NCBI GenBank assembly: GCA_965649765.1
Contig: OZ287750.1
Location: 54,746,001 to 54,810,000, forward strand
Source of the DNA: Bispira polyomma
Lineage: Eukaryota
Reading direction: 5' to 3'
DNA: 64,000 bases
Part shown: piece by piece, positions 2,441 to 50,318 of the stretch
Numbering within the stretch: the first letter of the stretch is position 1
Layout: every line of letters starts with the position of its first letter
Program-made: the position numbers and the translations under genes
The notes under the pieces: generated by a model
Seen by the model: the letters and a program-made list of their open reading frames with translations, nothing else
Database searches by the model: none
Told to the model about the DNA's origin: nothing

Positions 2441-4255
2441 CTAGAGACCTAGTAGTTGATTTCCACGGTTTCTCTTAGAGACCAGGTAGACTCTTCCACC
2501 TTGACAGTTGTAAATTTTGCTCCCAAGCCACTTATAATACCAGCTCAGGCACCAGTTAAATCTGACCTCTATTGTGGTGACCAGTGCAAGCCTATTCAGT
2601 GTGAGAATAAGTTTCTGATGTTCTGCTATGGTCGATGCTGAATGAGCCATGACTGCAACCAGGAAGTTGATTAACATGACGGCAACCAAGAATGTAAAGA
2701 CCACATGAAGCGAATACAGAATGCCTATGTTTGTAATTTTGAAGGCTGTCAGATCCACCATGTTTAGCATGATACGAAATATGGTGTATGCAGTTTCGAA
2801 GACATTACTGAAGTCTTCAATGCATCCTTCATTAGAGTTTTGATTCACGAATGTTTCGAACACATGGATGAATGGTAGAACCATGATTAAGTATAGAACC
2901 ATAAAGTGGCCCATATTTCTGATCATTCCTTGTATACTGATGATAGAAGAACCAACAACCGGTAGGAGCTGGATGAAATAAAATATAGACCAAACACACA
3001 TAATAGGGATTATTACTTTAGTAATTTCTATAACTAAAAGAGCAGAATCATTCACACCATTGCCAGATCTTGTCAAGAGTAATGGAACACAAATTAGAAC
3101 AGAACAATACATCAAACACTGGCAAATTCTGTAAAAGATTGTATTGATAATTAGTTTCTTCTTTCCTAGTAAGTGTTTCACAGCTTTATCATAGCCTTTA
3201 AATTTAAACTGGATTATCTCAACGATATCAAAAATCATGAGTGCAACAGCTGCAGCCACTAGTATAACAGTCAAGGTATACCTAAACTCCTTTGATAATA
3301 TAACTTCCAAGTCAGGGCATGTATACTCAGTCAAGTTCCCTGGGTAAAGGTTTTGCATATAACTTGTATCAATATCAAAGATGAAGAAGGCCATCATAAA
3401 ACTAAGTCTCATGAAAAACCAAAAAAGAGCAGGTAACCAGTTTTGTTTAATCTTTGCAGCATACCAAGCACTAAATAAAGGTCCAAGGACAATACTGGTA
3501 ACTTTTGGATCTGTCAACTTCTCTTGTTGTAAAAAAGCAATATACCGAAGAGGAGATTTATTCTTACGACTTCCTGTTTCATACTCAGTGATGTCATGCC
3601 ATCGGTAGATAGTCATACCTCGAATGTCTTCACGAGCTACATAGATGCCTTTAGTTTCAAATATAACCTTGACCAGTTGCAGCGCTCCTTGTTGTGCTGC
3701 ATACTCCAATGGCCTGAAACCATCATCATTTTCACCTTCAAGTAACTCTACCATTTTGTCCTTAGTAGTCTGAGAAAGTAGCCACTGAAAAATGGTACAC
3801 ATTTTTTCTTCCAATGTTGGATAATATGTGGACATAGAAACAAGACTGTGTAGAACATTATGATTGGTACTGTCTTTTGTCAAGATATTAACTCCGTAGT
3901 TAATCATCACTTCTACAGCATGCTTAGCGCCCGCACCCACAGCTAGGTGCAATGGAAGTGACACTTTGTACCGATGCTTTCCAAATACACCAATAAAATA
4001 ATCATCCTGAAAGTCAAAAGGACAGTTCAGTAAGACATTCAACTCTGCAGCCTCTGTACATGATTTGAGGGTATTTTCTACATTCTGTGCATTATCAGAC
4101 ATGAGGGCATCAAAGTAGTCCTGGTACATCTGTATTGGTATGCTCGAGTCTAAAGTTTTCTTTTCATTGCCTTTAGATTGATGCAGTTGAGCAGATTCTG
4201 AAACACTCTCCAATTCAATGTCTGTAACTGTAGCTGCAGAGGATACTTTTGCCAT
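2441..4255 (-). CDS. TRPV-like cation channel, paralog 1 (604 aa, uninterrupted ORF)
   Basis: Ankyrin repeats (LPLHLAVGAG; HNVLHSLV; ENDDGFRPLEYAAQQG), TRPV-type linker (WHDITEYE...SPLRYIA), six hydrophobic segments, S4-S5 linker FYFIQLLPVVG, pore helix/filter TIFRIMLNMVD, S6 MLINFLVAVM and a TRP-helix-like segment. Confidence 0.92.
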   Translation of the reverse strand: MAKVSSAATVTDIELESVSESAQLHQSKGNEKKTLDSSIPIQMYQDYFDALMSDNAQNVENTLKSCTEAAELNVLLNCPFDFQDDYFIGVFGKHRYKVSLPLHLAVGAGAKHAVEVMINYGVNILTKDSTNHNVLHSLVSMSTYYPTLEEKMCTIFQWLLSQTTKDKMVELLEGENDDGFRPLEYAAQQGALQLVKVIFETKGIYVAREDIRGMTIYRWHDITEYETGSRKNKSPLRYIAFLQQEKLTDPKVTSIVLGPLFSAWYAAKIKQNWLPALFWFFMRLSFMMAFFIFDIDTSYMQNLYPGNLTEYTCPDLEVILSKEFRYTLTVILVAAAVALMIFDIVEIIQFKFKGYDKAVKHLLGKKKLIINTIFYRICQCLMYCSVLICVPLLLTRSGNGVNDSALLVIEITKVIIPIMCVWSIFYFIQLLPVVGSSIISIQGMIRNMGHFMVLYLIMVLPFIHVFETFVNQNSNEGCIEDFSNVFETAYTIFRIMLNMVDLTAFKITNIGILYSLHVVFTFLVAVMLINFLVAVMAHSASTIAEHQKLILTLNRLALVTTIEVRFNWCLSWYYKWLGSKIYNCQGGRVYLVSKRNRGNQLLGL

Positions 4256-4370
4256 AATGTTAACATGAAACTTTTACAAACTGCTTTGAAAATATTACTG
4301 TCTTTCACAATTTTACTCTGGTAGAGATAAACCGCCTCTGTGTTTTCACCTACTAAGCTAAAGCATTCCA

Positions 4371-4410
4371 CTCACTTTAGTGAGAGAAAGAAGTCTATAT
4401 ATATACACAG
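4371..4410 (-). promoter_or_regulatory. Putative TATA box and initiator of TRPV paralog 1
   Basis: TATATATA at 4396-4405, ~145 bp upstream of the ATG, followed by TCACT. The same arrangement occurs upstream of paralogs 2 and 3. Confidence 0.5.
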
Positions 4411-4727
4411 TAACACACCCCAACAGTAAATCAATCCATCAGCGAAAATATCCAACCAGTGTAAATAATTCTCAGTACCCCAAGTCAACAGAAACCCATT
4501 TAAAATGGCAAAGGACTCTGCCTAAACTCTTACAAATGTAAATGGGTGTATTGTACTGAACAATACCAGGTATTATCTGGGTAAATTGCAGACTGATAAG
4601 AAAAGGATCAGTTTTATGCTGTACACATCTTATATTATCAAATATGCACTAATGTTTCTGGGTCAGCGAGAAATCGTAAAGTCAAAGCTTTGCCTCAGTA
4701 GCAACTGAATTAACAGGGCACACTCAC

Positions 4728-4790
4728 TAGCCATTAATGGCTAAACGGAACTTATTGTTCTGAGTGGATACCTTGGTAATAACAGAACAG
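4728..4790. promoter_or_regulatory. Conserved upstream block with 16-bp palindrome TAGCCATTAATGGCTA (paralog 1)
   Basis: Block TAGCCATTAATGGCTAAACGGAACTTATTGTTCTGAGTGGATACCTTGG recurs at 11528, 36724 and 50953. Confidence 0.45.
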
Positions 4791-6077
4791 ATTATTATAT
4801 TGTGCAATTGTGGCATTTCAAGGAACACTATCTTTGTGAAATAGTTGCTCAGTGAACTCATACTTAAACTGCAATTATTGATCTAAAAAAAGTAGCAATC
4901 TAATTACAGAGTAAAGTATCTTCATTAATCTTTTTGGTAAAAATATAGGTATAAATTTCCATGCCAACTTGAATGCAGCTACTAAGATGTAGGAAATAGT
5001 CATAAATTGTATGTTGTAACTACATTTTCATTGACTATAAAAACCATCTCTGAGTCACCTTTATGCTGGATTACCTCATGCTGTAGAAAATGTATCTGCA
5101 TGTATTTCTCACATCAGAGAAAGTTGTAAAATATACAAGGTTTTATGACATTGAAGTAGAAATACCCTGTTTAGCAGCTTTATTTGTTGCTGTTAAAGTA
5201 CATTTGACGTGACTGTTGATGATAAAGAATAATTGATACTTTGCCAGAGGACAATTACGTGTTATTGGATAACAAAAGGCAAAACCAAGCTTTGGCTGGT
5301 ACAATATTTATGACCCAATGCATCGTTGGATCTGCCCTTTTTCTGTTTTGGTAAATATAAAAAAATATCCCTAAATTAAAGCTTAGGCTTGAATGAAATA
5401 CTTCCACTGTTAATCACATGCATTTTGGCAAGATAAATCCACTGTTTACTTAAAACTTAGTGAATTTATTTAAATTGCAATCTACCAATCCGAGGTAGCT
5501 CCTTTATGTGTATTATGCCTTGGAGCCAAGGCCAACGGTTCCGATATTTTGCTTACACTTGGTAAAATATGCGTATGCTTACCACTGATGCCTACTGTTT
5601 TATTAAATTGCCACATTATTAAGAGTATGAAGTTGCAATTAGTCCAAGGTACTTTCTTCAAATGGATTAACCTTGAAATCAAGATCAAATATTCATATTG
5701 TTCCTATTCTATGATTTTACTGTTGATCTATTTCGCTTGCACATTGCTGAAACTTAGCCCTGCACCTGATTATACGAAACACTAAGATATTTCGATTGTA
5801 ATACTTATTTTTCTAAATATACACATTTCTTTACCAGTGTTTGAAGCCATCATAAAATATTATATTTTTATTTAGTTTCTACTACAGTGAAAATACTGAA
5901 TTTGTTGTTTAATGCACTGTTTGTCTTAATAATTTCTGCACAAAAAATCGTGCTTGGGTCAATGTCTGGATCGTCATGTGTTTCACAATTAATATCAGGA
6001 TCATTAGTTATATCAGGATTCTCTGGACAACCGGTGGGGCATGTGAGGAATTCTTCCTGGTACTCGATGATGGCCCG

Positions 6078-9201: not shown

Positions 9202-11052
9202 TTACAAGGTATCAACAGAAAAAGTTTCTTTTGGCTGCAGATTTAGTAGTTGATTTCCACGATTTGTGTTAGAGATCAGGTAGACTCTACCATCATGACC
9301 GTAATAAATTTTTCTCCCAATCCACTTATAATACCAGCCCAGACACCAGTTAAATCTGACCTCTATTGTGGTGACCAGTGCAAGCCTATTCAGTGTGAGA
9401 ATAAGTTTACGATTTTCTGCTATGTTTGATGCTGAATTAGCCATGACTGCAACCAGGAAGTTGATTAACATGACGGCAACCAGAAATATGAAAACCACAT
9501 GAAGAGAATACAGAATACCTATGTTTATGATGTTGAAGGCAGTCAGATCCACCATGTTTAGCATGATACGAAAGATGGTGTATGTGGTTTTGTAGACATT
9601 GCTGAAGTCATCAATACATCCTTCATTGGAGTTGTGATTCACAAATGTTTCAAACACATGGATGAATGGTAGTATCATGATTAAGTATAGTATGATGAAG
9701 TGGCCCATATCGCTGATCATTCCTTGTATGGTGATGATAGAAGAACCAACTATTGGTAGCAGCTGGATGAAGTAAAAAATGGACCAAACACACATAATAG
9801 GGATTACTACTTTAGTAATATCTATCACCAAATTGGCAACATAATTTGCACCATTGTCAGATCTTGTCAAAAGTAATGGAACACATATTAGAACAGAACA
9901 ATACATTATAGACTGGCAAATTCTGTAAAAGGTTGTATTGACAATTAATTGCTTCTTTCCCAACAAGTATTTGGCAGGTTTATCATAACCACTAAATTTG
10001 AACCGGATAACCTCAACGATATCAAAGATCATAAGTGCAACAGCTGCAGCCACTAATATAACAGTCAAGCTATACCTAAACTCCTTTGATAGGTTAACTA
10101 CCATGTCAGCACATATATACGCGGTCAGGTTCCCTGGGTGAAGCATCTGTATATAACTTGTATCAATGTCAAACATGGAAAAGGCTATCATAAAACTAAG
10201 TCTCATGAGAAACCAAAAAAGAGAAGGTAACCAGTTTTGTTTAATCTTTGCAGCAATCCAGACACTGAATAAAGGTCCAAGGACAATACTGGCAACAATT
10301 GGATCTGTTAGCTTCTCTTGTTGCAAACAAGCAATATACCGAAGAGGAGATTTATTCTTACGTCTTCCTGTTTCATACTCAGTGATATCATACCATCGGT
10401 GGACAATCATTCCTTGAATGTCTTCACGGGCTACATAGATGTCTTTTGTTTCGAATATAGCCTTGACCAGCTGCAGTGTTCCCTGTTGAGCTGCATACTC
10501 CAATGGCCTTAGGCCATCATCATTTTCACCTTTAAGTAACTCTACCATGTGCTCCTTAGCAGTCTGAGACAGTAGCCACTGAAACATGGTGCACATTTTT
10601 TCTTCTAATGTTGGATAATACATAGACATAGAAACAAGACTGTGGAGAACGTTATGATTGGTACTGTCTTTTGTCAAGATATTAACTCCATAGTTAATCA
10701 TCACTTCTGCAGCATGCTTAGCTCCCGCACCAACAGCCAGATGAAATGGCAGTGAAACTCTGTATCGAATCTTTCCAAATACACCAATAGAATAATCATC
10801 CTCAAACTTAAAAGGGCAGTTCAGTAAGATGTTTAACTCTTCGGCTTCTGTACAAGATTTCAGAGTATTTTCTACTTCCTGTGCACTATCAGACACAAGA
10901 GCATCAAAGTAGTCCTGGTACATCCGTATTGGTATGCTGGAGTCCAAAGTTTTCTCTTTGTTATTGTCTTTAGATTGATGGAGTGGATTAGACTTTGATA
11001 CACCCTCCAAGTAAATGTCTCCCATGGCAGCTGCAGAGGATACTTTTGCCAT
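9202..11052 (-). CDS. TRPV-like cation channel, paralog 2 (616 aa)
   Basis: Intact ORF colinear with paralog 1; identical pore segment TIFRIMLNMVDLTAF. Confidence 0.92.
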   Translation of the reverse strand: MAKVSSAAAMGDIYLEGVSKSNPLHQSKDNNKEKTLDSSIPIRMYQDYFDALVSDSAQEVENTLKSCTEAEELNILLNCPFKFEDDYSIGVFGKIRYRVSLPFHLAVGAGAKHAAEVMINYGVNILTKDSTNHNVLHSLVSMSMYYPTLEEKMCTMFQWLLSQTAKEHMVELLKGENDDGLRPLEYAAQQGTLQLVKAIFETKDIYVAREDIQGMIVHRWYDITEYETGRRKNKSPLRYIACLQQEKLTDPIVASIVLGPLFSVWIAAKIKQNWLPSLFWFLMRLSFMIAFSMFDIDTSYIQMLHPGNLTAYICADMVVNLSKEFRYSLTVILVAAAVALMIFDIVEVIRFKFSGYDKPAKYLLGKKQLIVNTTFYRICQSIMYCSVLICVPLLLTRSDNGANYVANLVIDITKVVIPIMCVWSIFYFIQLLPIVGSSIITIQGMISDMGHFIILYLIMILPFIHVFETFVNHNSNEGCIDDFSNVYKTTYTIFRIMLNMVDLTAFNIINIGILYSLHVVFIFLVAVMLINFLVAVMANSASNIAENRKLILTLNRLALVTTIEVRFNWCLGWYYKWIGRKIYYGHDGRVYLISNTNRGNQLLNLQPKETFSVDTL

Positions 11053-11160
11053 AGTTTAATACTGGCAAATGTCAACATAAAACTCAGCAAACTGCTTTGA
11101 AAATCTTTTTAATAGTAGAGAAATACCGACTATCTGTGATCACCTGGCGGACTATAACCT

Positions 11161-11200
11161 ACTCACGTTAGTGAGTGGGACAAATCTATATATACCCTGT
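11161..11200 (-). promoter_or_regulatory. Putative TATA box and initiator of paralog 2
   Basis: TATATATA at 11187-11194 and TCACT, positionally homologous to paralog 1. Confidence 0.45.
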
Positions 11201-12271
11201 AACATACACCAACAGTAAATCAATACCTCAATGTATAGCAGTAACATTATTGTTGATAGTGTAAATCATTCTCAGAACCCCAAGTCAACAGAAACCCATT
11301 TCCTATGGTAAAAGGCTATATTCAAACTCTTTAAGTCTTACTTTAAGATGAGTATATTGTGTTGGTGTGTAAACAGCAACATTTATTATCTGAGTTCATA
11401 GAAAATTGGTCATTGGAAAAATGATTATATGCTGTACACATGTCATTATATGAAATATTTTGGATGTTTTTGGATCAGGGAGGGATCGTAAAGTCAAAAC
11501 TTTGCATGAGTAACAAGGTGCATTCCCTAGCCATTAATTGCTAAACAGAACTTATTGTTCTGAGTGGATACCTTGGTAACAATAAAACTGATTATTATGT
11601 TATGACATTTTATGAGACCTTTTTCTTGTGAAATAGTTCATCAGTAGACTCACACTTAAATTACAACTATTCATATTATAAAGTAGAAATATACATACAT
11701 ATCTTCATTAATCATTTTGTTGAAAATATGGCTCTTAATCCACTTCAACTTGAATGCCAATCCTAAGATGTAGGAAAATTTAAATGCAGGCATAAATTGT
11801 AAGTTTTACATATACTTTCACTGAAAATAAGAACCATGTTTGAGTCACCCTTATCCTTGATCACATCATGCTGTAGAAAATGGTTTATGATATTATGGCG
11901 AAAATATCTTGGTTAGCACCGTTATTTATTGCTGTTAAGGTACATTTACCTTGGCCGATGATGACAAAGAACAATTCACATGTGTCATGGAACAACAATG
12001 GGTAAAAAAAAGCTTTGGTGTTTTAATATTCATGACCTAATGCATCATTTGATATACCCTTTTGTTTCTGGGAAATAAAAAAGGTGACCCACACTGACAT
12101 AATTTTATTACCCATTAATGAATTCAGTTTGAATAGTCTGACAAATATCACAACTAGAAATTGTCATAAAAGTAACATAAAAGCTTTGAATAAATCATGA
12201 GCACAAACAGGGGATTGGTAAACAGTAACTTAAGTGTCTTTTCAATGTAGTTTTAATGTACTTTGACTTCA

Positions 12272-12496: not shown

Positions 12497-13133
12497 TTGA
12501 CTTCAAATAAAATCTATATACAAAACTACATATGACAAATTGCAAGTTCATTTTTTTTCATGATTTTAACAAAACAGTAGACGCTTGTTGTGTAAATGAT
12601 ATGTGTATTATGTTGAGCATTGTGTTAAGCATAATGAAGCAAGGAATATATCAAAAGTAAAAATCATTGGCCTTGCCTTCAAGAAAAATACATATAAAGG
12701 AGCTACCTTGGATTGGTGGATTGGCATTTAAAAATAGTCAGTGATGTGTAAATGTTAAGATTTTGTAGGCTCTTTTTTGTCAAAATATATGTATCTAATG
12801 GCACCGACACGACTCCAGGACCACTCTAAGATTTATACTGCAAACAATGTCTTATCTGACATCTAAGACCTCTCTTTCACTGACAATCATATTCCTTATC
12901 AGAATATGAATGCGATTCTAACTAATGTCTGTCAGATTGACAGCTGTCCAAGGTCATAATTTACACATGTATGATAGTGTAACAAGGGATATTACTTTAA
13001 TGGGGGATAACCCTTGTTTTGATATGGTTTGTAAACCCAAAGAGTCCCAGGCTGTGCGCATAAAGCCAGATGGTATTATGCAGAAGGGAGACATGAGTGG
13101 CATTAGAGTAAGGAAGCTCTTAGTAGAAGATAT

Positions 13134-13189
13134 GTATAGTGTCATAAAGTGGCCCATATTTTTAATCATGCCTTGTATGCTGATGATAG
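13134..13189 (-). pseudogene. Detached fragment of the TRPV pseudogene (S4-S5 linker/S5)
   Basis: Encodes IISIQGMIKNMGHFMTLY, which continues the sequence that stops at ~16420. Confidence 0.8.
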
Positions 13190-14479
13190 TATGTTTGAGA
13201 TGACGAAAGAAAGTAACATCACCCTGGAGTACATGATAGACAATTAACAATTATGAAACTGTCTCCCAGTTGGTGGCAACACATTTGGTCTCGTCGAGAA
13301 ATTGCCGTTTTTTGTTTTGTTTTATAACTAGTGCAAGTGTCAATATGAAACCTCATAAGAAAGTGAATAAAGGACTGAACTCATGCATGTTATCAGCTCC
13401 AGTCATAGAGTTGACACATCTTTCCTTATGATCTTGCTATGCCCATGGACTTTACGATTGGACCAATGATTATGCTGTTGCGCTTTAAAAGATGCCTAAC
13501 ATCTATAAAGTGTGTTAAAAATTCCTACGAATAATAATTAATGGTTTTTACACATCTGTTGGATGGATAGGGTGATGTAATATGTATAACTCAAGCATGT
13601 TATCAGCTGCAGTCATTGGTGAGGGGTTTAATCTGGATCTCGTCAGTAATATTGCACTGTACTTTACTGGTATTATATCTTGTTCATGTACGCTATGTGT
13701 ATTTTTTTTGCTTGTGTTTGACAGCAATTACATTTGTCTTTTAACTGGTATTTATATTTATGTCTGGTACATGTACAGCATGTGTATATTTTATGCCTGA
13801 TCTTTGACAACCTTTACACTTGGATACTTAACTGGTTCTTATGTTTATGTCTGGTACATGTACGGCATGTGTATATTTTAGGCCTCTTTCTTTTCAGTGT
13901 ACACACGTATACAGTAAAGTAGTTGGGGCTTCTGGGTTATTAAAAAAGTTGCTCATATTACTGATTGTAGGCCTGTCTAGCCCTACTAAACACAGGTTAT
14001 TAGTCATTACACCTATTTTTGTTAACATCTTTGACAAAATACAAAGTTTTACATTAGTATACTATCATGCCTGGGTAGTAGCTCTTGCAAACTTGTATTA
14101 CACTTTTATATCTGGTGTACTTGGTGTATGTGGGTTACTTAAAAACAATTGTAATGGTTATTATATTGATTGCCAGATTGAAAATGGTAGTTACCTACCA
14201 TTGTTAGTAATATTTTACCATCGTAATTTAATGGACAATATGTTGAATGTCATCTTCAGGGACAATTTAAATTCAGCTGTTTACCACTTAGCCCTCAACT
14301 TCTTCCAGTCGACCACTCTGTTAGTCAGGTTAGGTGTATTTCTGCTGTTAAACTTTACAGTTTAGTTGTTAATACTGGTGGTTGTTTCAATTCTTTGTAT
14401 CCACGTATTCCAGTTATGTCTACTCTTAATATTTCTGTCTAGCATGAATTGTTAAAAGATTACTTAACTGGTGGAGTTA

Positions 14480-16260: not shown

Positions 16261-16419
16261 TAATTCTTTAGTAGACACTAACTAATATCACAAACTTATA
16301 TCATTACTAGTTAATATGTCATACAACAATGTGATTCTGAATGCATGGAATAAAATAACAAAAAGTACATTATTGTGTTCTCATTGTATAGTTAACCAAC
16401 AATCCTTCATTGGGCACTG

Positions 16420-17151
16420 TAGAAGAAGTAAACATGGGCAGGAACTGGATGAAGTAAAATATGGACCAAATACACACAATAGGGATTCCTACTTAATCTT
16501 TGCAGCTTTTCTGACACTAAATATTGGTCCAAGGATAATACTGGTAACATTTGGATCTGTCAGTTTCTCTTGTTGTAAATAAGCAATATACTGAAGCGGA
16601 AATGTATTCTTATGACTTGCTGTTTCACACTCAGGGATGTTATGTGATGTTAGTAGACATCCCTCGAATGTCTTCACAAGGTACATATGTGTCTTTAGTT
16701 TCAAATATAGCCTTGACTAGCTGCAGTATTCCCTGTTGTGCTGCATACTCAAATGGCTTAAGGCCATCATCATGTTCACCTTCAACTAACTCTACCATGT
16801 GCTCCTTACCAGTCTTAGGCAGTAGCCAATGAAGTGTGGTGTACATTTTTGCCCCCAATGTTGGGTAATACATATACATACAAACAGCCAGATTTAACAG
16901 CAGTGACACTCAGTGCCATGCTCCCAAACACACCAATACAATAATCATCTTCAAAATCAAAAGGGCAGCTCACTAACTCTGTACAAGATTTCCTCTGCAT
17001 TATTAAACACAAGGGCATCTAAGTAATCCTGGTAGCTCTGTATTGGTATGCTCTTTGTTTGTTGTCTTTCAATTAAAGGGGTTGATTGGACTTTGAAAAC
17101 ACTCTCCAATTTAATGACTTTCATTGTAGCTGTAGAGGATACTTTTTCCAT
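16420..17151 (-). pseudogene. TRPV-like pseudogene (5' part)
   Basis: MEKVSSTA..., SCPFDFEDDYCIGVFG, KEHMVELVEGEHDDGLKPFEYAAQQG, YLQQEKLTDP and WSIFYFIQ occur in shifting frames with internal deletions. The proximal promoter is replaced by an insertion. Confidence 0.9.
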
Positions 17152-17955: not shown

Positions 17956-19740
17956 GTTCGAATCTGTTGGTGGGGACATGCGAGATACATGTAAAAACAA
18001 GTTCATCAATCATAGTAAATAAATTTTTGACTTGTCTCGTTGCTTTCAGAGTTTATAATGCTAGCATAAAGGGAAAGGCGGGAATTCGCCCAGGAATCGA
18101 AGTATTTGATTGGTCTTGATTTGCCATTTGATTGGCTTTTGGTTGGTATACAAATAATTTTACTGTAAGCATTTTTGTGAAATAGTTGATCAGTAAACTT
18201 AAATTTGCTTAAGCTGTACGTATAGATTTTTAGAAAGTAGAAATATAGATATAAAGTAAATTTGTCAAATTGAATGCAGATACTAAGATGTAAGACAATT
18301 TAAATAAGGCATAAATTGTATGTTTCACATATATTTTCACTGAATATAAGAACCATCTCTTTGCCACCTTTATCATTGATTACCTCATCCTGTAGAAATC
18401 CTCATCCTGCATGTATTTCTCATACATCATAGAAAGTTGAAAAGTTACCATAGTTTATGATACTGAAGTGGAACTATCTTGGTTAGCACCTTTATTTATT
18501 GTTGATAAAGTACATTTAACCTGTTTGTTGATGACAAAATATAATTGACTCTGCAAAAGGACAAATACGTGTTATTGGATAACACAATACAAAAAAAAGA
18601 AAGATTTGTTCTATGCAATATTGAACACCTAATGCATCATTGATCTATCCTTTTGTTTTGGGCAAATATACAAAATGGTAACTCACACTTGCATTTTTTA
18701 ATTTCCCCTTAATGCCTTTCATTATGAGCAAACTAACACAAAATCAACAAATAATACAAAATGTTTCTTTGCAGAAATCATGCAGCTAACCAGTGCATTG
18801 GTAAACAGCAAATTCAATATTTTCATTGTAATTTCAAACTACATTGACTTCAAGCAAAATCCATTGCATTGGTAGATTTCTATTTAAAAATATTCAGTGA
18901 TGTGTAAACAGTGGCTTGTTTTGTCAAAATGCATGTATCTAGAGACACCTACAAAACTCTATTATCTCAATGGCTTTCCTCAAAATTAACATCGATTTGT
19001 TGTAATAGAGCATTGCAGTCATTGACAGCATATTAGGTACACAGCACGGTGCCTGGGTCTGGTCCTCGAAAGCACTATATTGCATAATCCAACTGACACA
19101 AGGTCCACTGGTCATGTTGACTGTTTCTGTAAAACATTCATACAGGGGAACAGAAAAGTAATACCAAGGTGTTCTATTTTGTAAATATTGTCCTATTTAA
19201 TACAGAAACACTATTATAGCTAATGTGAATAGCATCTTCATGAATATGTCACCCAATGCATGACTTTCACTCCCAAGTCACGTCCTGGACTTCTACCAAG
19301 CCAGAATCAACCCTGACCCTTTCTGAGACAAGAATGACAGGTTTCTTTTTGTCTTCGTTGCGATGTCTGCTAGCTAGTTTGTTGAAATTTTATACAATCA
19401 TAGCCTGACACACCAGTAATACTTACCATGATTCATGGACCTGACCTCTGCTTGACCTTTAGTAGGGAGTTCCCTTCTTTGATTTGTCTCTGCACTTAGC
19501 TCGAGATACATTGGGTAGCCCATCTAGTTGCTGGTATCCCCCTTTCTAACTCAACAGGCATGCTCCTCACTATCACTTTTGTGATGTGAGCCTTTATACT
19601 TATATATACATCTTGTTTACATTGCATCTGCTTTTTACTAATCATATTCTTATGGGCGAGTCTTGTATTAATATTACAAGCACGTATACATTAGGACCTG
19701 AAGGAGTTTCATAAAGAAATTCTAATTTTATTGAGAGACA

Positions 19741-20032: not shown

Positions 20033-20096
20033 TGGCAAAATCAAGCTTTTAGGTAGCCATTTTACACTGGATTTTACATTTTTAGTCTTTATTTAT

Positions 20097-23935: not shown

Positions 23936-23939
23936 AACC

Positions 23940-34427: not shown

Positions 34428-36260
34428 TTAACTGGCTTCTGGTGGCTGCAGACTTAGAAGTTGATTTCCACGGTTTCTCTTTGAGACCAGATAGACCCTT
34501 CCGTCATGACAGTCGTAAAGTTTGCTCCCAATCCACTTATAATACCATCCTAGGCACCAGCTAAACCGACCCTCTAATGTGGTGACCAGTGCAAGCCTAT
34601 TCAGTGTGAGAATGAGTTTCTGATGTTCTGCTATGTTTGATGCTGAATTAGCCATGACTGCAATTAGGAAATTGATCAACATGATGGCAACCAAAAATAT
34701 AAACACCACATGAAGAGAATACAGAATGCCTATATTTGTAATGTTGAAGGCAGTCAGATCCACCATGTTTAGCATGATACGGAAGATGGTATATGTGGTT
34801 TTGAAGACACTGCTAAAATCATCAATACATCCTTCATTGGAGTTGTGATACACAAATGTTTGAAACACATGGATGAATGGTAGGATAATGATAAAGTATA
34901 GTGTCATAAAGTGGCCCATATCTCTGACCATTCCTTGTATGCTCATGATAGAAGAACCAACCACTGGCAGGAGCTGAATGAAGTAAAATATTGACCAAAC
35001 ACACATAATGGGTATTACTACTTTGGTAATATCTATGACTAAAATGACAGCATCACTTGCACCATTGTTAGATCTTGTCATAAGTAAGGGAACACATATT
35101 AGAACAGAAGAATACATGAAACACTGACAAACTCTGTAAAACATGGTATTAATAATTAATTGCTTCTTTCCTAACAAGCATTTTACAGGTTTATCACAAC
35201 CTCTATATTTAAACCGGATGATGTCAACAATATCAAAGATCATGAGTGCAACAGCTGCAGCCACTAGTATAACAGTCAAGCTATACCTAAACTCCTTTGA
35301 TAGTATAAGTTCCAAGTCAGGGCATGTATACTCAGTCAGGTTGCCTTGGTAAAGGTTCTGCATATAACCTGTATCAATATCAAAGATGAAGAAGGCTATC
35401 ATAAAGCTGAGTCTGATGAGAAACCAAAAAGCAACAGGTAACCAGTTTTGTTTACTCTTGGCCGCTATCCAGACAGTAAATAAAGGTCCAAACACAATAC
35501 TGGCAACCATTTTATCTGTCAGCTTTTCCTTCTGTAAATATGCAATATACCGAAGAGGAGATTTATTTTTACGACTTCCTGTTTCATACTCAGTGATGTC
35601 ATGCCATTGGTAGACAATTATTCCTCGAATGTCTTCATGAGCTACATAGATGTCTTTAGTTTCGAATATAGCCTTGACCAGTTGCAGTGTTCCCTGTTGA
35701 GCTGCATACTCCAATGGCCTCAGGCCATCATCATTTTCACCTTCAAGTAACTCCACCATGTGCTCCTTAGCGGTCTGAGAAAGTAGCCACTGAAACATAG
35801 TGCACATTTTTTCTTCCAATGTGGGGTAATACGTAGACATAGAAACAAGACTGTGGAGAACATTATGATTGGTACTGTCTTTTGTCAAGATTTTAACTCC
35901 ATAGTTAATCATCACTTCTGCGGCATGCTTAGCTCCCGCACCAACAGCCAGATGGAACGGCAGTGACACTCTGTACCGATGCTTCCCAAATACACTAATA
36001 CAATAATCATCCTCAAAGTCAAAAGGGCAATTTAGTAAGACATTCAAGTCTGCAGCTTCCTTACAAGATTTCAGAGCATTATCTACTTCCTGTGCATTAT
36101 CAAATATGAGAGCATCAAAGTAGTCCTGGTACAGCTGTATTGGTATGCTTGAGTCCAGAGGTTTCTTTTCGTTGTCTTCAGATTGATGCAGTTCATCAGT
36201 GGCTGAAACACCCTCCAATTTACCAACTCTAAATGTAGCTGTAGAGGATACTTTTGCCAT
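34428..36260 (-). CDS. TRPV-like cation channel, paralog 3 (610 aa)
   Basis: Intact ORF colinear with the other paralogs. Confidence 0.92.
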   Translation of the reverse strand: MAKVSSTATFRVGKLEGVSATDELHQSEDNEKKPLDSSIPIQLYQDYFDALIFDNAQEVDNALKSCKEAADLNVLLNCPFDFEDDYCISVFGKHRYRVSLPFHLAVGAGAKHAAEVMINYGVKILTKDSTNHNVLHSLVSMSTYYPTLEEKMCTMFQWLLSQTAKEHMVELLEGENDDGLRPLEYAAQQGTLQLVKAIFETKDIYVAHEDIRGIIVYQWHDITEYETGSRKNKSPLRYIAYLQKEKLTDKMVASIVFGPLFTVWIAAKSKQNWLPVAFWFLIRLSFMIAFFIFDIDTGYMQNLYQGNLTEYTCPDLELILSKEFRYSLTVILVAAAVALMIFDIVDIIRFKYRGCDKPVKCLLGKKQLIINTMFYRVCQCFMYSSVLICVPLLMTRSNNGASDAVILVIDITKVVIPIMCVWSIFYFIQLLPVVGSSIMSIQGMVRDMGHFMTLYFIIILPFIHVFQTFVYHNSNEGCIDDFSSVFKTTYTIFRIMLNMVDLTAFNITNIGILYSLHVVFIFLVAIMLINFLIAVMANSASNIAEHQKLILTLNRLALVTTLEGRFSWCLGWYYKWIGSKLYDCHDGRVYLVSKRNRGNQLLSLQPPEAS

Positions 36261-36380
36261 AGTTTTATAGTAGCAATTGCCAACATGAATCTTAGCAAAC
36301 TGTTTGAAACTGTCTTTTACAATTTTAGTGTAATAGATATTACTTCATATGTGTTAACTCCTGTCACACAGAAATGCTCT

Positions 36381-36420
36381 ACTCATTTTAGTGAAAGCAC
36401 CAAGTCTATTTATATATACA
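36381..36420 (-). promoter_or_regulatory. Putative TATA box (TATATATAAATA) and initiator of paralog 3
   Basis: Positionally homologous to paralogs 1 and 2. Confidence 0.5.
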
Positions 36421-37849
36421 CAGTAAAGGTCCCTTAGCAGCAAATCAATCCATCAGTGAAAATATCCAGCCACAATTCATAACAGGAATATTATTGTTGA
36501 CAGTGTTAATCGTCCACAGTACCCCTGATCAACAAAATCCCATTTATAGATGTCAAAAACAACAACAGTTATTATCTAAGGCAATAAATTACAGATAAAA
36601 GGACCAGTTTCATGCTGTATGTGTGTCATTACATAAAATATTTCGATATGTTTCTGGGTGAGTGAGGAATTGTAAAATCAACATTTAGCCTTAGTAATGA
36701 CTGAATTATCATGGCACATTCTCTAGCCATTAATGGCTAAACGGAACTTATTGTTCTGTTTGGATACCTTGGCAACAACAAAACAGATTATTGTATTGTG
36801 GCATTTCATTTTTCTTGGCGAAATAGTGCATAAGTGAACTCCAACGTAAACTGCAAATATAGATTTTTTTTTTTATTGCAATTATAGATTTTGTAAAGTA
36901 GAAAAGTAAATAGAAAGTTCTTGTTGGATATATGACACTAATTCTGTTTGAATTTAGATATTCTGATGCAGAAAAGGTTAAATGCAGGCATCAATTGCAT
37001 GCTTTAAGTACATATTCACTGAATATAATAACTATATTTGAATCACCATAATCCTGCTTAACGTCAGACTATACAAAATGGACCTGCATGCATTTCCCAC
37101 TTGTCAGAGGAAGTTGTAAATGTTACAATGGTTTATGACATTGAAGTGGTAAGCTGCCTGGTGACAGCTTTTTTTTGTTACTGTTAAAGTATATACAACT
37201 TGGCTGTTTATGACAAAGAATTATTTATACCATGCAGAACGACAATTGTGTGTTATTGGATACCAAAGGCAAAATTTGCTCTGATCAGTGTAATATTTAT
37301 GACCTAATAAATAATTGATCTACCCTTTAGATAATATCCATCAATTGTAGCTTAGACTTGAATGCAGCATTGATTATCGAAAAACATCCAATGTTGGGGG
37401 GGGGGGGGGGGGGGGGTGTTAAGTAGGTACTTAAATTTCTGGGCCATTTCTCAACGGATTTTTGATGAAAATAAAATCTCGCAGTAATCACAGTAACATA
37501 AGCTTGTCCAGTTTCATTAAAAAATCCTCCGGCCTCAGGCTAAAGCACCTGCACAATATTCTTGAATCTGTGCTGTCCTATTACCACATTTGTTACTGTC
37601 AAAGTAACTTGGCTGTATATAGATCTACATTATACATATGTACATGTTCTATTTAAAAAAAAGTTTGAACCTGCAGTTTACCTGTTATTTACCAATACAC
37701 TGTTTGTTTTCATTATTTCTGAAAAAAATTATCTTACATGTGACTTTTATGATCGTTTGTGATTGTGACATTTGTTTGACATATTTAAGGAATATAAAAA
37801 TAAATGGTAATGTATTTAGATTTTTAACGAGACATCTTCTAAAGCGCAA

Positions 37850-38250: not shown

Positions 38251-38309
38251 AAAAATGACTCGATCACACATAGTTTTGATTGGACTCCAACTTGTTTATG
38301 TGATAAAGA

Positions 38310-38830
38310 ACTAGCTAATATCACTTTCCATACCTACCGGCGATCTGGGGCGACAATGGCCTTTAATGCCCATGTTCCCCTCCAAGACATTCAAAGTCAG
38401 GGCATTTGGTCCTCTGAGTGTGTGTGGAGATATATCACACAGGACCACTCAGACTTTGATCAAGTAGCCCTACCTCTCCAATCTCTGCTCAACCCTATTC
38501 CTACTTCCTAGTTGGGCCTAGGTGGTTATTCTCTCTTTTACTATAATTTATATGCTATAATTTTACAATTTTCTTATCTATTTAAGGCCACCTTATACTC
38601 AAAAACATTACTTAACCTTCACTAGATATGTGTAAGGCTAAGGCCAGTATAAATCATGTAATTCGTTAAGGTTACCTTAAATTTTGCTAAACCTAAACTC
38701 CAATTTTAAAGTTATGTTAACCTTAAACTTAGTCGACGTTAAGTCACTCTTAAGGTGAACTTAGACTAAGTAAAACTTTTGGCTAAGGCGGCCTCATTTA
38801 TATTAACTAAATTTTAACCAGTTACATATA
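38310..38830 (+). mobile_element. YR retrotransposon 3' remnant (recombinase C-terminus plus downstream region)
   Basis: TFHTYRRSGATMAFNAHVPLQDIQSQGIWSSECVWRYI, homologous to 25200-25398, followed by an AAGGTNACCTT-rich tract. Confidence 0.8.
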
Positions 38831-47470: not shown

Positions 47471-48506
47471 AATAACTTTGATGTACTGCCACCAGCCAAA
47501 ATGTAGCACACGAAAAAGAGGAGAATGGACAGATTAACTGAGGATTATAAGCCAATGGATGATTTAAAAAAGGATAAATTATCTTGAATTATTTCATTTT
47601 GTCATATAAGTTAGAAACTATTTTGAGTTGACAAACACTTGTTCTTTGTCCATTATTCGATGGCTGGAATTTGAGTTTTGTTTGAATCACACGGACACTT
47701 TTTAGTGGGAGCATGGTGTGCAAGGGACCATGGCATAAACTATATAACATTAGCTTGATTAAATATTTAATTAAAAGTATTAAAGATTATTCTGCTGGGT
47801 AACTATGTACCTCCCAAGGCGGCAGAATCTTGAAGCCATTAGTAATTTGTAAGTTAATTTACATAATAACATGGACTTATTTCCTTCTTCTGGACTGTTC
47901 AACTTGTGCTTTATAATTAAGTTTCGATGTTCTCTCAATGTTTCAAATAGATATTATAAAACTGAAGTCTGCAGTTGGTATTGTCTGCAAAACATTTTCC
48001 TCGTATCAGAGCTTTATCTTCTGTCCTCCCCCCCCCCCCCCCCCCCCCCGCTGGCCCACCTGGTTTGATATATTGTGGGTTACTTAATTTACCATCTCAT
48101 TATTATTGGATTTGTTCAGTACTCGTCCATCTTAAAATAAGAGAGTACCGTAGTACTCCTCGAATTTGGTCAGTACTCCTCCATTTACAAATTAAGCAGT
48201 ACCATACTCCCTAAAACAAAAAGATATCTGGAGCACTGTACTAGTTTATATAAATCTAAATATAGATTAACATAGTTTTTTGCAATAAAAGCCCAAGTTC
48301 AAATTACATGGTGTGAATATTTGTTAAATTGTTCATCTCTCACAAAATCTTAAATGTATTGCAATAAATGCAATAAATGTTGTTTTGACCGCTACTCGGT
48401 TCCACAAAATACAATCCAGGAGGAAGAGCCAAGGACGGGTACCCAGGACTGCAACTCACAATATATAATTTATGATATATTAAATTTAACTGGCTTCTTG
48501 TGGCTA

Positions 48507-50318
48507 CTAACTTAGTAGTTGATTTCCACGGTTTCTCTGAGAGACCAGGTAGACCCTTCCATCATGACAGTCGTAAAGTTTGATCCCAATCCACTTATAA
48601 TACCAGCCCAGGCACCAGCTAAACCTACCCTCTATTGTGGTGACCAGTGCAAGCCTATTCAGTGTGAGAATGAGTTTCTGATGTTCTGCTATGTTCGAGG
48701 CTGAAATAGCCATGACTGCAACCAGGAAGTTAATCAACGTGACGGCAACTAAAAATGTGAAGACCAGATGAAGTGAATACAGAATTCCTATGTTTGTGAT
48801 GTTAAAGGCAGTCAGATCCACCATGTTTAGCATGATACGGAAGATGGTATATGTGGTTTTAAAGACACTGTTGAAGTCTTCAATGCATCCTTCATTAGAG
48901 TTTTGATTTACGAATGTTGCAACCACATGGATGAATGGTAAAATAATGATAAAGTATAGTGTCATAAAGTGGCCCATATCTCTAATCATCCCTTGTATGC
49001 CAATGATAGAAGAACCAACCACTGGTAGGAGATGAATGAAGTAAAATATTGACCAAACACACATAATAGGGATGACTACTTTGGTAATATCTATCACTAA
49101 AATTACAGCATCATTCGCACCATTGTTAGATCTTGTCATAAGTAATGGAACACATATTAAAACAAAACAATACATCAAACACTGGCAAACTCTGTAAAAC
49201 ATGGCGTTAATAATTAATTGCTTTTTTCCAAGCAAGTATTTTACAGGCTTATCCCAACCTCTAAATTTAAACCGAATGGTGTCAACAATATTAAATATCA
49301 TGATTGCAACAGCAGCAGTAAATAATATAACAGTCAAGCAAATCCTAAACTCCTTTGATAGTATAACTTCCAAGTCAGGGCATGTATACTCAGTAATATT
49401 CTCTGGGTAAAGGTTTTGCATATAACTTATATCAATATCAAAGATAAAGAAGGCCAACATAAAGCTGAATCTGATGAGAAACCAAAAAACTGCAGGTAAC
49501 AAGTTTTGTTTACTCTTGACAGCTATCCAGACAGTAAATAAAGGTCCAAACACTATACTGGCAACCATTGGATCTGTCAGCTTTTCCTTCTGTAAATATG
49601 CAATATACCGAAGAGGAGATTTATTCTTACGACTTCCTGTTTCATACTCAGTGATATCATGCCATTGGTAGACAATTATTCCTCGTATGTCTTCACAAGC
49701 TAAATAGATGTCTTTAGTTTCGAATATAGCCTTGACCAGTTGCAGTGTTCCCTGTTGAGCTGCATACTCCAATGGCCTCAGGCCATCATCATTTTCACCT
49801 TTAAGTAACTCTACCATGTGCTCCTTAGCAGTCTGAGACAGTAGCCACTGAAACATGGTGCACATTTTTTCTTCCAATGTTGGATGATACGTAGACATAG
49901 AAACAAGACTGTGGAGAACATTATGATTGGTACTGTCTTTTGTCAAGATATTAACTCCATAGTTAATCATCACTTCTACAGCATGCTTAGCGCCCGCACC
50001 CACAGCTAGGTGCAATGGAAGTGACACTTTGTACCGATGCTTTCCAAATACACCAATAAAACAATCATCCCGAAAGTCAAAAGGACAGTTCAGTAAGACA
50101 TTCAACTCTGCAGCCTCTGTACATGATTTGAGGGCCTTTTCAACTTCCTGTGCATTATCAGATATGAGGCCGTCAAAGTAGTCCTGGTGCATATGTATTG
50201 GTATGCTTGAGTCTAAAGTTTTTTCTTTGTTCTCTTTAGATTGATGCAGTTGATCAGTTGTTGTATCTCTCTTCAATTTACCAACTCTTACTGAAGCTGC
50301 AGAAGATACTTTTGCCAT
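48507..50318 (-). CDS. TRPV-like cation channel, paralog 4 (603 aa)
   Basis: Intact ORF ending QLLS followed by TAG TAG; the downstream sequence still reads PQEAS as in paralog 3. Confidence 0.9.
   Translation of the reverse strand: MAKVSSAASVRVGKLKRDTTTDQLHQSKENKEKTLDSSIPIHMHQDYFDGLISDNAQEVEKALKSCTEAAELNVLLNCPFDFRDDCFIGVFGKHRYKVSLPLHLAVGAGAKHAVEVMINYGVNILTKDSTNHNVLHSLVSMSTYHPTLEEKMCTMFQWLLSQTAKEHMVELLKGENDDGLRPLEYAAQQGTLQLVKAIFETKDIYLACEDIRGIIVYQWHDITEYETGSRKNKSPLRYIAYLQKEKLTDPMVASIVFGPLFTVWIAVKSKQNLLPAVFWFLIRFSFMLAFFIFDIDISYMQNLYPENITEYTCPDLEVILSKEFRICLTVILFTAAVAIMIFNIVDTIRFKFRGWDKPVKYLLGKKQLIINAMFYRVCQCLMYCFVLICVPLLMTRSNNGANDAVILVIDITKVVIPIMCVWSIFYFIHLLPVVGSSIIGIQGMIRDMGHFMTLYFIIILPFIHVVATFVNQNSNEGCIEDFNSVFKTTYTIFRIMLNMVDLTAFNITNIGILYSLHLVFTFLVAVTLINFLVAVMAISASNIAEHQKLILTLNRLALVTTIEGRFSWCLGWYYKWIGIKLYDCHDGRVYLVSQRNRGNQLLS

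What the first reader, a model, noticed from the sequence alone, without database searches (positions are those of the whole stretch)
2441..50318. Tandem array of intronless, divergent TRPV-like channels with birth-and-death features: candidate sensory receptor family
Seen: four intact single-ORF paralogs plus a pseudogene, all on the minus strand, with duplicated promoters and 3' flanks. The pore segment TIFRIMLNMVDLTAF is invariant, while the N-terminus, S1-S2, S2-S3 and S3-S4 loops and the C-tail vary. Established: canonical TRPV genes (TRPV1-6, osm-9/inactive, ocr/nanchung) are multi-exon, while intronless tandem arrays typify chemoreceptor expansions such as vertebrate odorant receptors and cephalopod chemotactile receptors. 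Inference: a retroposition-derived, lineage-specific TRPV clade, possibly chemo- or thermosensory, or used for epithelial Ca2+ uptake (e.g. biomineralisation); heterotetramers are possible.
Basis: partly seen in the sequence, partly recalled or inferred. Interest (0 to 1): 0.75.

Follow-up and report, generated by a model that had tools for sequence, protein, structure and literature searches.

The report
Tandem array of TRPV-like channel genes
Four working copies and one dead copy of a single-exon gene for a shortened TRPV-type ion channel sit in a row in this invertebrate genome; they are real, conserved and recently duplicated, but they belong to a large, old, unnamed gene family whose job is still unknown.

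Summary
Four intact single ORFs of 603-616 aa and one decayed copy lie head to tail on the minus strand. Each repeated unit is about 3-3.4 kb and carries about 1.1 kb of 5' flank.

The proteins are TRPV-type channel subunits by sequence (TRPV6/TRPV3) and by fold (TRPV2, Z 22.9). They are shortened to about four ankyrin repeats and lack the TRP-box tryptophan. The filter reads L-N-M-V-D.

The four copies form one clade (100/98 support). They duplicated after the split from the nearest relative in the databases. Pairwise dN/dS is 0.24-0.32, so they are under purifying selection, and no window outside the N-tail exceeds 0.65.

The array arose by DNA duplication, not retroposition. The family itself is not lineage-specific. 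The genome has 10 members on three chromosomes, and a 1.84-billion-protein library holds at least 148 full-length relatives, none with an informative name.

Being intronless is not distinctive here. TRPC4/5-like and TRPV5/6-like genes of this genome are single ORFs too.

The family falls outside the TRPV5/6-like clade. I could not test whether it equals the published TRPVL family. I found no RNA data, so function stays inferred.

The parts
2441..4255 (-). Gene A: intact single ORF, 604 aa, short TRPV-like channel subunit
   Evidence: ORF list; tblastn 81-82% identity to B, C and D; weak Ank_2 Pfam hit; member of the four-copy clade
9202..11052 (-). Gene B: intact single ORF, 616 aa
   Evidence: scores 834 bits against the family profile
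16391..17151 (-). Pseudogene: pieces matching residues 1-59, 64-99, 134-214, 220-270 and 414-447 in three frames; S1-S3 deleted; S5 to the C-terminus missing
   Evidence: tblastn pieces and printed alignments; 78 bits for profile positions 114-194 only
13083..13190 (-). Isolated 36-aa relic matching the S4-S5 linker and S5 (residues 437-466); either the displaced tail of the pseudogene or a second relic
   Evidence: tblastn E 3e-6
34428..36260 (-). Gene C: intact single ORF, 610 aa; the copy that was modelled
48507..50318 (-). Gene D: intact single ORF, 603 aa; closest to C (86% aa identity)
   Evidence: C+D clade, support 100/99
4256..5362 (-). Duplicated 5' flank of gene A (promoter and 5'UTR region)
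   Evidence: self-blastn 2035-5362 vs 8843-12082 and 2418-5340 vs 34423-37328; alignment conserved up to the ATG with a TATA-like motif at about -150
11053..12271 (-). Duplicated 5' flank of gene B
36261..37385 (-). Duplicated 5' flank of gene C
   Evidence: 36605-37107 vs 50829-51311; 37165-37385 vs 51309-51534
50319..51534 (-). Duplicated 5' flank of gene D
18237..18852 (-). Remnant of the same 5' flank upstream of the pseudogene
   Evidence: self-blastn 4937-5364 vs 18237-18675, 11745-12271 vs 18265-18852 and 18270-18653 vs 36948-37328
2035..2440 (-). 3' flank of gene A, shared with B (8843-9201); C and D share only about 130 bp (34300-34427, 48370-48506)
   Evidence: AATAAA/ATTAAA at +299 to +346 after the stop in A, B and C

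Best explanation
The window holds a head-to-tail array of four functional genes and one decayed copy. Each gene is a single 1.8-kb ORF for a roughly 605-residue subunit of a TRPV-type cation channel.

The subunit looks like a cut-down TRPV. It has:
- a disordered tail of about 35 residues;
- about four ankyrin repeats rather than six;
- the TRPV linker beta-hairpin;
- six membrane helices;
- a pore helix with the filter L-N-M-V-D, whose Asp aligns with the filter Asp of TRPV6;
- an S6 helix with N-F-L-I-A;
- a TRP helix without the usual Trp;
- a C-terminal beta-strand, after which the protein ends.

By inference, four subunits form a cation channel that probably passes Ca2+. Mixed tetramers of the paralogs are possible.

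The array grew by unequal, DNA-level duplication of a 3-3.4 kb unit that carries its own promoter. This happened after the split from the nearest sequenced relative. One copy has since died. The others are kept by purifying selection. Selection is loosest on the N-tail, the extracellular S1-S2 loop and the C-end.

The genes belong to an old, widespread, intronless family inside the TRPV/TRPVL super-group. The family lies outside the TRPV5/6-like clade. Family-wide marks are an N-glycosylation site and a Cys in the S1-S2 loop, plus a Cys in the pore turret; the two Cys may form a disulfide.

The stimulus and the tissue are unknown.
For: Shown by calls:
- ORFs, identities and the pseudogene.
- Shared flanks.
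- phmmer against the PDB: TRPV3/TRPV6, E 1.2e-11. The filter Asp aligns to the Asp of TRPV6 'TIID'.
- Family profile against the PDB: TRPV6, E 2.4e-37, in one stretch covering profile positions 73-550. Only TRPV channels are among the channel hits in the top 60.
- AF2 model: pLDDT 83.8, pTM 0.80.
- Foldseek: TRPV5/6/3/1, E 1.5e-12, TM 0.60-0.63 over about 590 columns.
- VIA-align: TRPV2, Z 22.9, rmsd 3.7 A over 480 residues. Model residues 45-605 match TRPV2 166-719, and model 39-601 match TRPV1 193-752.
- dN/dS 0.24-0.32 with dS 0.28-0.38. The pore window has dN 0.032 against dS 0.32, so its invariance comes from selection, not recent conversion.
- IQ-TREE: the four copies form one clade (100/98). 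That clade is sister (100/100) to P0001/P0016/P0002 from another assembly.
- Own genome: 10 loci score 735-859 bits against the family profile; the next best scores 118.7 bits.
- Library search: 872 representatives at E<=1e-30. Of the best 150, 148 are channel-sized.
- Conservation over 172 family rows: N498 in 159, M499 in 128, D501 in 108 (N in 35, E in 16), N530 in 170, A534 in 166, C313 in 157, C478 in 144, N307 in 148, and T/S309 in 140.

Inferred: tetramer formation, Ca2+ permeability, the disulfide, and promoter function of the shared flank.
Against: - There is no RNA evidence. The three runs that hold the locus show even depth over flanks and coding sequence, as DNA does.
- Pfam's Ion_trans model does not reach E 0.01 in any of the four proteins. 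Only weak Ank_2 and sub-threshold PKD_channel hits appear.
- The TRP-box Trp is absent, and the filter N-M-V-D has no studied counterpart, so conduction is not guaranteed.
- With four sequences the selection test has little power.
- The deep branching among the TRPV-like clades is unresolved.
- No named TRPV-A/B, TRPA or TRPVL reference could be put in the tree.
- The organisms of the family members are not given by the tools.
Confidence: 0.72

Rival explanations
1. The family is simply TRPVL, the 'vanilloid-like' sister family of TRPV. TRPVL was named in 2015 from cnidarians and the annelid Capitella. If so, the array is a local expansion of an already named, though uncharacterised, family.
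For: - Passages in PMC8749608 and PMC9242649 say TRPVL occurs in annelids and cnidarians and is sister to TRPV.
- Earlier notes of this scan call the animal a fan worm.
- The family sits beside, not inside, the TRPV5/6-like clade.
- Like the published TRPVL consensus, it lacks the TRP-box Trp and has a conserved Asn just after the pre-S1 Trp (PMC9242649 Table 1).
Against: - The published TRPVL consensus (W - N G Phi F W N F I A A) differs from this family at three positions. It has W where the family has Y/F (162 of 172 rows), F where the family has L (159 of 172), and A where the family has L/M/V/I.
- Two other intronless TRPV-like clades in the same genome could equally be TRPVL.
- No TRPVL sequence could be obtained, so the placement is untested.
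Confidence: 0.4
2. The genes are a retroposition-born, lineage-specific sensory receptor family. It evolves like chemoreceptor arrays, by birth and death with diversifying selection on the ligand-facing loops.
For: - There is a tandem array with a pseudogene.
- The highest dN/dS values lie in the extracellular S1-S2 loop (0.65) and around S3-S4 (0.62).
- Glycosylation sites differ among the copies.
- Recent duplicates on single contigs also occur in other family clusters, judging by members that share a contig length.
Against: - The copies carry their flanks, so the duplication was of DNA, not of RNA.
- No window outside the N-tail has dN/dS above 0.65.
- The family is old and broad.
- Housekeeping-type TRPC4/5-like and TRPV5/6-like genes in this genome are also single ORFs.
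Confidence: 0.15
3. The genes encode constitutively open epithelial Ca2+-entry channels of the TRPV5/6 kind, for example for tube or chaeta mineral handling, rather than sensors.
For: - The best sequence match of the family profile is TRPV6.
- The filter Asp aligns with the Asp of the TRPV6 filter.
- The N-glycosylation site in the S1-S2 loop is conserved in 148 of 172 rows. From recall, TRPV5 is regulated through a glycan in that loop.
Against: - The family lies outside the clade that holds this genome's own TRPV5/6-like genes.
- The rest of the filter differs (N-M-V-D against T-I-I-D).
- 35 of 172 family members have Asn instead of Asp.
- No expression data exist.
Confidence: 0.12
4. The copies are silent, slowly decaying duplicates that happen still to be open.
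For: There is no RNA evidence. One copy is already dead. C-terminal lengths differ because the stops are shifted.
Against: - All six pairwise dN/dS values are 0.24-0.32 at dS of about 0.3.
- The 5' flanks diverged by 23-32%, while the proteins kept 79-86% identity and an identical pore.
- Four 600-codon frames stay open in AT-rich DNA.
Confidence: 0.06

Closest known systems
TRPV5/TRPV6 and the TRPV1-4 channels (solved structures)
   Same: - The whole-chain fold is the same: ankyrin domain, linker beta-hairpin, S1-S6, pore helix, TRP helix and C-terminal strand.
- The S6 motif N-x-L-I-A, the S4-S5 Gly, the S5 and pore-helix Phe and the filter Asp are kept.
- 9 of the 12 group-1 TRP fingerprint positions of PMC9242649 are kept.
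   Different: - The protein starts at about the third ankyrin repeat of TRPV1/2 (the repeat borders are recalled).
- It ends right after the C-terminal strand.
- There is no Trp in the TRP helix: 0 of 164 pattern-matched family proteins have one.
- The filter is N-M-V-D.
- The family has a Cys pair in the S1-S2 loop and the turret.
- Sequence similarity is low: 47 bits for one protein, against 117-121 bits for this genome's TRPV5/6-like genes.
TRPVL (vanilloid-like) family of cnidarians and annelids
   Same: Reported as the sister of TRPV, present in annelids, with no TRP-box Trp in its consensus. It has no solved structure and no known function.
   Different: The published consensus differs at three fingerprint positions.
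[quoted passage not shown]
   Same: They are described as clustering near both TRPV and TRPVL without belonging to either. The authors raise the possibility of unrecognised TRPV-like subfamilies in lophotrochozoans (passages).
   Different: Their sequences, lengths and gene structures are in supplementary tables that I could not open, so no comparison was made.
Intronless tandem chemoreceptor arrays (vertebrate odorant receptors, cephalopod chemotactile receptors)
   Same: Single-exon coding regions, tandem copies, pseudogenes, and variable extracellular loops. PMC11526382 lists such intronless receptor families.
   Different: These are six-helix tetrameric channels, not GPCRs or pentameric receptors. 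There are only four or five local copies. No positive selection was seen. Being intronless is common among channel genes of this genome.

Membership tests
TRPV (canonical vanilloid subfamily) | TRPV whole-subunit fold: ankyrin domain, linker beta-hairpin paired with a C-terminal strand, six membrane helices with pore helix, TRP helix | tested here: met
   AF2 model pLDDT 83.8. Foldseek: TRPV5/6/3/1, E 1.5e-12, TM 0.60-0.63. VIA-align: Z 22.9, rmsd 3.7 A, 480 residues against TRPV2.
TRPV (canonical vanilloid subfamily) | Six N-terminal ankyrin repeats | tested here: not met
   The structural alignment starts at TRPV2 residue 166 and TRPV1 residue 193. The profile starts at TRPV6 residue 161. 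The model has helix pairs for about four repeats. Pfam finds one Ank_2 stretch.
TRPV (canonical vanilloid subfamily) | TRP-box tryptophan (rat TRPV1 W697 in the fingerprint of PMC9242649) | tested here: not met
   Residue 21 after the S6 Asn is L in the window copies. It is never W in the 164 of 174 family proteins where the S6 pattern was found. This genome's TRPV5/6-like L025 and L031 and TRPC-like L028 do have W there.
TRPV (canonical vanilloid subfamily) | [quoted passage not shown] | tested here: inconclusive
   9 of 12 positions are kept across 172 rows: W 170, G 155, F 166, F 150, Y/F 162, N 170, L 159, I 143, A 166. Three are not kept: N instead of F, W instead of Phi, and L/M/V instead of W (table). 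The published table gives 12 for TRPV, 10 for TRPA1 and 7 for TRPVL.
TRPV (canonical vanilloid subfamily) | Placement inside the TRPV clade in a phylogeny | tested here: inconclusive
   Rooted on this genome's TRPC4/5-like genes, the family forms its own clade (SH-aLRT 98). It lies apart from the clade holding the TRPV5/6-like genes (96), but the branches between the clades are unresolved. No TRPV-A/B or TRPA anchor was available.
TRPV (canonical vanilloid subfamily) | Acidic residue in the selectivity filter | tested here: met
   D501 aligns with the Asp of the TRPV6 filter. It is D in 4 of 4 window copies. Across 172 family rows it is D in 108, E in 16 and N in 35.
TRPVL (vanilloid-like) | Groups with the Nematostella and Capitella TRPVL reference sequences in a phylogeny | not testable with these tools
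   None of the 27 proteins looked up carried an informative name. Three homologue searches returned only unnamed proteins. The founding paper and the main review are not held. Accession lists are in closed supplements.
TRPVL (vanilloid-like) | Published consensus at the fingerprint positions (W - N G Phi F W N F I A A) | tested here: inconclusive
   The family agrees at W, G, Phi, F, N, I and A, in lacking the final W, and perhaps at the Asn. It disagrees at 666 (Y/F, not W), 678 (L, not F) and 697 (L/M/V, not A). A consensus is not a definition.
Retrocopy (retroposition-derived gene) | A copy that lacks the parent's flanks and promoter, bounded by a poly(A) remnant | tested here: not met
   The four copies and the pseudogene share about 1.1 kb of 5' flank and up to 0.4 kb of 3' flank. 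The absence of introns is shared by the whole family, so any retroposition predates the array.
Chemoreceptor-type birth-and-death array | Tandem copies with pseudogenes, and positive selection on exposed loops | tested here: inconclusive
   The array and the pseudogene are present. The highest 30-codon dN/dS outside the N-tail is 0.65, in the S1-S2 loop. Four sequences give little power.

The most novel reading that the evidence does not exclude
The genes represent a so far unnamed subfamily of group-1 TRP channels, distinct from both TRPV and TRPVL. It would be a 'minimal TRPV' with:
- four ankyrin repeats;
- no TRP-box Trp;
- an N-M-V-D filter;
- a conserved glycan and a Cys pair that tie the S1-S2 loop to the pore turret.

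It would be intronless throughout, widespread in marine invertebrate assemblies, prone to local duplication, and largely invisible to domain-based annotation.
Probability: 0.3. Interest if true: 0.65.

Novelty: new variant of a known kind. Interest (0 to 1): 0.45.

Why it matters
TRP channels are the main thermal, chemical and mechanical sensors of animals. Almost all functional knowledge comes from vertebrate, fly and nematode members.

This report delimits a compact TRPV-like channel family by sequence. In this genome members score at least 735 bits against the family profile and the next best locus scores 119 bits.

The family has clear structural departures from TRPV. It also has many members in public assemblies, yet none of the clusters I looked up had an informative name.

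The genes are single 1.8-kb ORFs, so they can be cloned straight from genomic DNA for expression and cryo-EM. The four recent paralogs give a natural series for mapping which loops set stimulus specificity.

If the family turns out to be TRPVL, it would give that uncharacterised family a fold model, signature residues and an expansion to study. If it is not TRPVL, it adds a subfamily to the TRP tree.

Tried and rejected
Searches for named relatives. Three word-indexed homologue searches found 15, 2 and 13 proteins, all unnamed: one protein, a pore region of a distant paralog, and a 55-row profile. Three cluster look-ups of 27 proteins gave only 'hypothetical protein' (1 of 27) and a metagenome tag on one 50-aa member. 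Two Atlas searches returned generic TRP clusters or noise.

RNA evidence. The one run search gave three runs of uncertain kind. Laid on 33800-38800, they show even depth over intergenic and coding DNA and contigs broken at paralogous stretches. I therefore read them as DNA. They say nothing about transcription.

Canonical anchors from the same genome. TIGR00870 turned out to be TRPC-like. Its best hits are TRPC4/5-like genes. A search with the TRPV5/6-like gene found no Nanchung- or Inactive-like exons. TRPV-A/B and TRPA anchors are therefore missing from the tree.

Literature. Seven full-text searches found no paper describing an intronless short TRPV-like family or its tandem arrays. That holds only for the held library. 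Peng et al. 2015 and Himmel & Cox 2020 are not held; I know them only through citing passages. Closed supplements may bear on the TRPVL question: Table S2 of PMC12980990 and Supplementary file 1 of PMC9242649.

Rejected readings:
- Retroposition as the origin of the array, because the flanks are shared.
- Gene conversion as the cause of the invariant pore, because dS there is 0.32.
- A transposon-carried gene. The transposon ORFs lie between units, not inside them.

Full report
WHAT IS THERE. The window has four long minus-strand ORFs:
- A, 2441-4255, 604 aa
- B, 9202-11052, 616 aa
- C, 34428-36260, 610 aa
- D, 48507-50318, 603 aa

They are 79-86% identical in protein; C and D are the closest pair.

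A fifth copy at 16391-17151 is dead. Its pieces lie in three frames. About residues 271-413 are deleted. Nothing follows the S4-S5 linker except a 36-aa relic 3.2 kb further on, at 13083-13190.

Self-comparison of the window shows a repeated unit of 3-3.4 kb. It holds the ORF, about 1.1 kb upstream and 0.02-0.4 kb downstream. The upstream flanks are 68-80% identical, against about 85% for the coding DNA. That level fits the synonymous divergence (dS 0.28-0.38).

The upstream alignment is conserved up to the ATG. A TATA-like word sits at about -150 in A, B and C.

Between the units lie only transposon ORFs:
- a tyrosine-recombinase retroelement at about 19.8-26 kb;
- unexplained ORFs at 29-31 kb;
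- a LINE at 60.5-62.9 kb.

A sixth, older member (43% identity, same strand) lies about 17 kb below the window start (L005).

WHAT THE PROTEINS ARE. Pfam gives only weak ankyrin hits and a sub-threshold PKD_channel hit. Ion_trans does not reach E 0.01 in any of the four.

Against solved structures, protein C finds only TRPV channels (TRPV3/TRPV6, E 1.2e-11). A 23-row family profile finds TRPV6 at E 2.4e-37 in one stretch, profile positions 73-550 against TRPV6 161-613. In that search the four rows above TRPV6 are designed ankyrin proteins.

An AlphaFold2 model built on the family alignment has pLDDT 83.8 and pTM 0.80.
- Foldseek ranks TRPV5, TRPV6, TRPV3 and TRPV1 first (E 1.5e-12, TM 0.60-0.63, about 590 columns).
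- VIA-align gives Z 22.9, rmsd 3.7 A over 480 residues to TRPV2. Model residues 45-605 match TRPV2 166-719, and model 39-601 match TRPV1 193-752.

The protein is therefore a whole TRPV subunit. It begins near the third ankyrin repeat (the repeat borders are recalled) and stops just after the C-terminal strand.

The alignment puts the Asp of L-N-M-V-D on the Asp of the TRPV6 filter.

FINGERPRINT. PMC9242649 (section 6 read in full) lists 12 residues shared by group-1 TRP channels. I mapped them onto protein C using the alignment and the fixed spacings in that table. The mapping is an inference.

Over 172 family rows, nine positions are kept:
- W 170
- G 155
- F 166
- F 150
- Y/F 162
- N 170
- L 159
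- I 143
- A 166

Three positions are not kept. There is an Asn where TRPV has Phe (108 of 172 rows). There is a Trp where TRPV has Tyr (150 of 172). There is no Trp in the TRP helix: none of the 164 proteins in which the S6 pattern was found has one, and 10 of 174 had no pattern match.

In the same genome the TRPV5/6-like and TRPC-like genes do have that Trp.

Family-wide extracellular marks are:
- an N-x-S/T site in the S1-S2 loop (N in 148 of 172 rows; T/S in 140);
- a Cys six residues later (157 of 172);
- a Cys in the pore turret (144 of 172).

A disulfide between the two Cys is my inference.

SELECTION. All six pairwise dN/dS values are 0.24-0.32. In 30-codon windows the ratio is:
- 1.0 only for the first 30 codons;
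- 0.65 in the S1-S2 loop;
- 0.62 around S3-S4;
- 0.10-0.20 in the ankyrin core, S4 and the pore.

The pore window has dS 0.32, so its identity in all four copies is due to selection rather than recent conversion. Two stretches with low dS (0.11-0.14) may reflect local conversion; I did not test that. Four sequences cannot reveal site-wise positive selection.

HISTORY OF THE ARRAY. In an IQ-TREE analysis of 27 rows, the four copies form one clade (bootstrap 100, SH-aLRT 98), with C+D inside it (100/99). Its sister (100/100) is a trio of proteins from other assemblies: P0002 plus P0001/P0016. The four-fold duplication therefore happened in this lineage.

L005 pairs with P0024 (100/100). This suggests, but does not show, that the two subtypes are neighbours in the relative too.

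THE FAMILY. Searching this genome with the family profile gives 10 loci at 735-859 bits: five on C3, three on C14 and two on C9. It also finds the pseudogene. Then comes a gap down to 118.7 bits.

The profile search of 1.84 billion representatives gives 872 proteins at E<=1e-30. The best 150 all score at least 337 bits. Of these, 148 are channel-sized, mostly 570-660 aa and matched end to end. The other two are long ankyrin proteins.

These proteins come from genome and transcript contigs and are each one predicted protein. I therefore infer, but cannot show, that the family is intronless generally.

None of the 27 proteins I looked up has an informative name.

A FastTree of 179 rows puts all 10 members of this genome in one subclade of 23 rows (support 95). 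The rest of the family lies outside it.

WIDER CONTEXT IN THIS GENOME. Other single-ORF TRP-type genes exist here:
- a seven-locus 'far' clade on C1 and C11;
- 696-866-aa frames on C8 and C7;
- TRPV5/6-like genes on C4, C12 and C9 (TRPV6 at E 4e-34 and 5.5e-33);
- two nearly identical TRPC4/5-like genes on C9 (E 1.5e-107).

Multi-exon TRPC-like genes are also present. Being intronless is therefore a trait of many channel genes in this animal. It does not mark this family as receptor-like.

A 41-row tree rooted on the TRPC-like genes separates four groups. They are this family (SH-aLRT 98), the TRPV5/6-like group (96), the far clade (100) and the C8/C7 pair (100). The order of branching among them is unresolved.

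COMPARISON WITH PRINT. TRPVL is described as a sister of TRPV found in cnidarians and annelids, without structure or function (passages in PMC8749608; PMC9242649; 10.1101/2021.11.14.466824). More recently it has been reported in choanoflagellates and other holozoans (10.64898/2026.06.15.732245 and PMC13663828).

The abalone study reports one TRPVL-like gene and two unclassified genes near TRPV/TRPVL (PMC12980990).

PMC9664204 divides TRPV into A, B and C/D types and finds C/D types duplicated in annelids and molluscs.

None of the passages I read mentions gene structure. My searches found no account of an intronless short TRPV-like family.

The TRPVL consensus in PMC9242649 differs from this family at three positions. 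I put the chance that the family is TRPVL at about 0.4.

VERDICT. It is wrong on retroposition as the source of the array and on the clade being lineage-specific. It is untested on function.

The most likely picture is a recent tandem expansion of functional subunits of an old, compact, TRPV-like cation channel family.

Noticed in passing
window 19817-26068 (+): Tyrosine-recombinase retrotransposon between the pseudogene and gene C. It has an 836-aa ORF with a Y-I-D-D reverse-transcriptase motif (21425-23935) and a 315-aa ORF with phage-integrase SAM-like domains (24451-25398). It also has 216-bp direct repeats that are 95.9% identical (19817-20032 and 25604-25819), which suggests a fairly recent insertion.
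   Followed up: partly
window 60470-62918 (-): LINE-type element: RVT_1 reverse transcriptase (E 5e-27) preceded by an endonuclease-type ORF (Exo_endo_phos_2, E 7e-6).
   Followed up: partly
window 37808-38308: Summed contig depth in the three laid runs jumps from about 8-75 to 3,400-80,000, with many odd joints. This is a very high-copy repeat about 1.5-2 kb upstream of gene C.
   Followed up: no
window 29115-31156 (+): Overlapping ORFs of 498 and 209 aa. The 498-aa ORF has no Pfam hit; the 209-aa ORF was not scanned. They are Ser-rich and have a Cys-His knuckle-like stretch. They may be the gag of another retroelement.
   Followed up: no
L028 1063-3183 (-) and L029 843-2963 (+) = G000:C9 24.227 Mb and 28.627 Mb: Two almost identical single-ORF TRPC4/5-like genes (707 aa; L028 matches TRPC4 at E 1.5e-107; L029 not searched) on opposite strands, 4.4 Mb apart. 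Multi-exon TRPC-like hits lie on C1 and C6. They are candidate retrocopies or a recent inverted duplication.
   Followed up: partly
L025 1590-3746 (-), L026 948-3461 (+), L032 1046-3694 (+), L031 1265-3055 (-): Single-ORF genes of 597-883 aa that group in one TRPV5/6-like clade. L025 and L026 match TRPV6 at E 4e-34 and 5.5e-33. L025 and L031 keep the TRP-box Trp.
   Followed up: partly
L013-L020 (G000:C11 46.25-46.27 Mb; C1 54.59-54.61 Mb; C1 100.35-100.36 Mb): A second intronless TRPV-like clade of seven loci in local pairs and triplets, one with an in-frame TGA. It has a different pore (no filter Asp in the alignment) and no TRP-box Trp.
   Followed up: partly
L023 244-2860 (+) = G000:C7 11.19 Mb: A copy of the 855-aa C7 type (L027), broken into four consecutive ORFs of 186-262 aa (measured from the first Met). 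It is probably another pseudogene, next to a LINE fragment.
   Followed up: no
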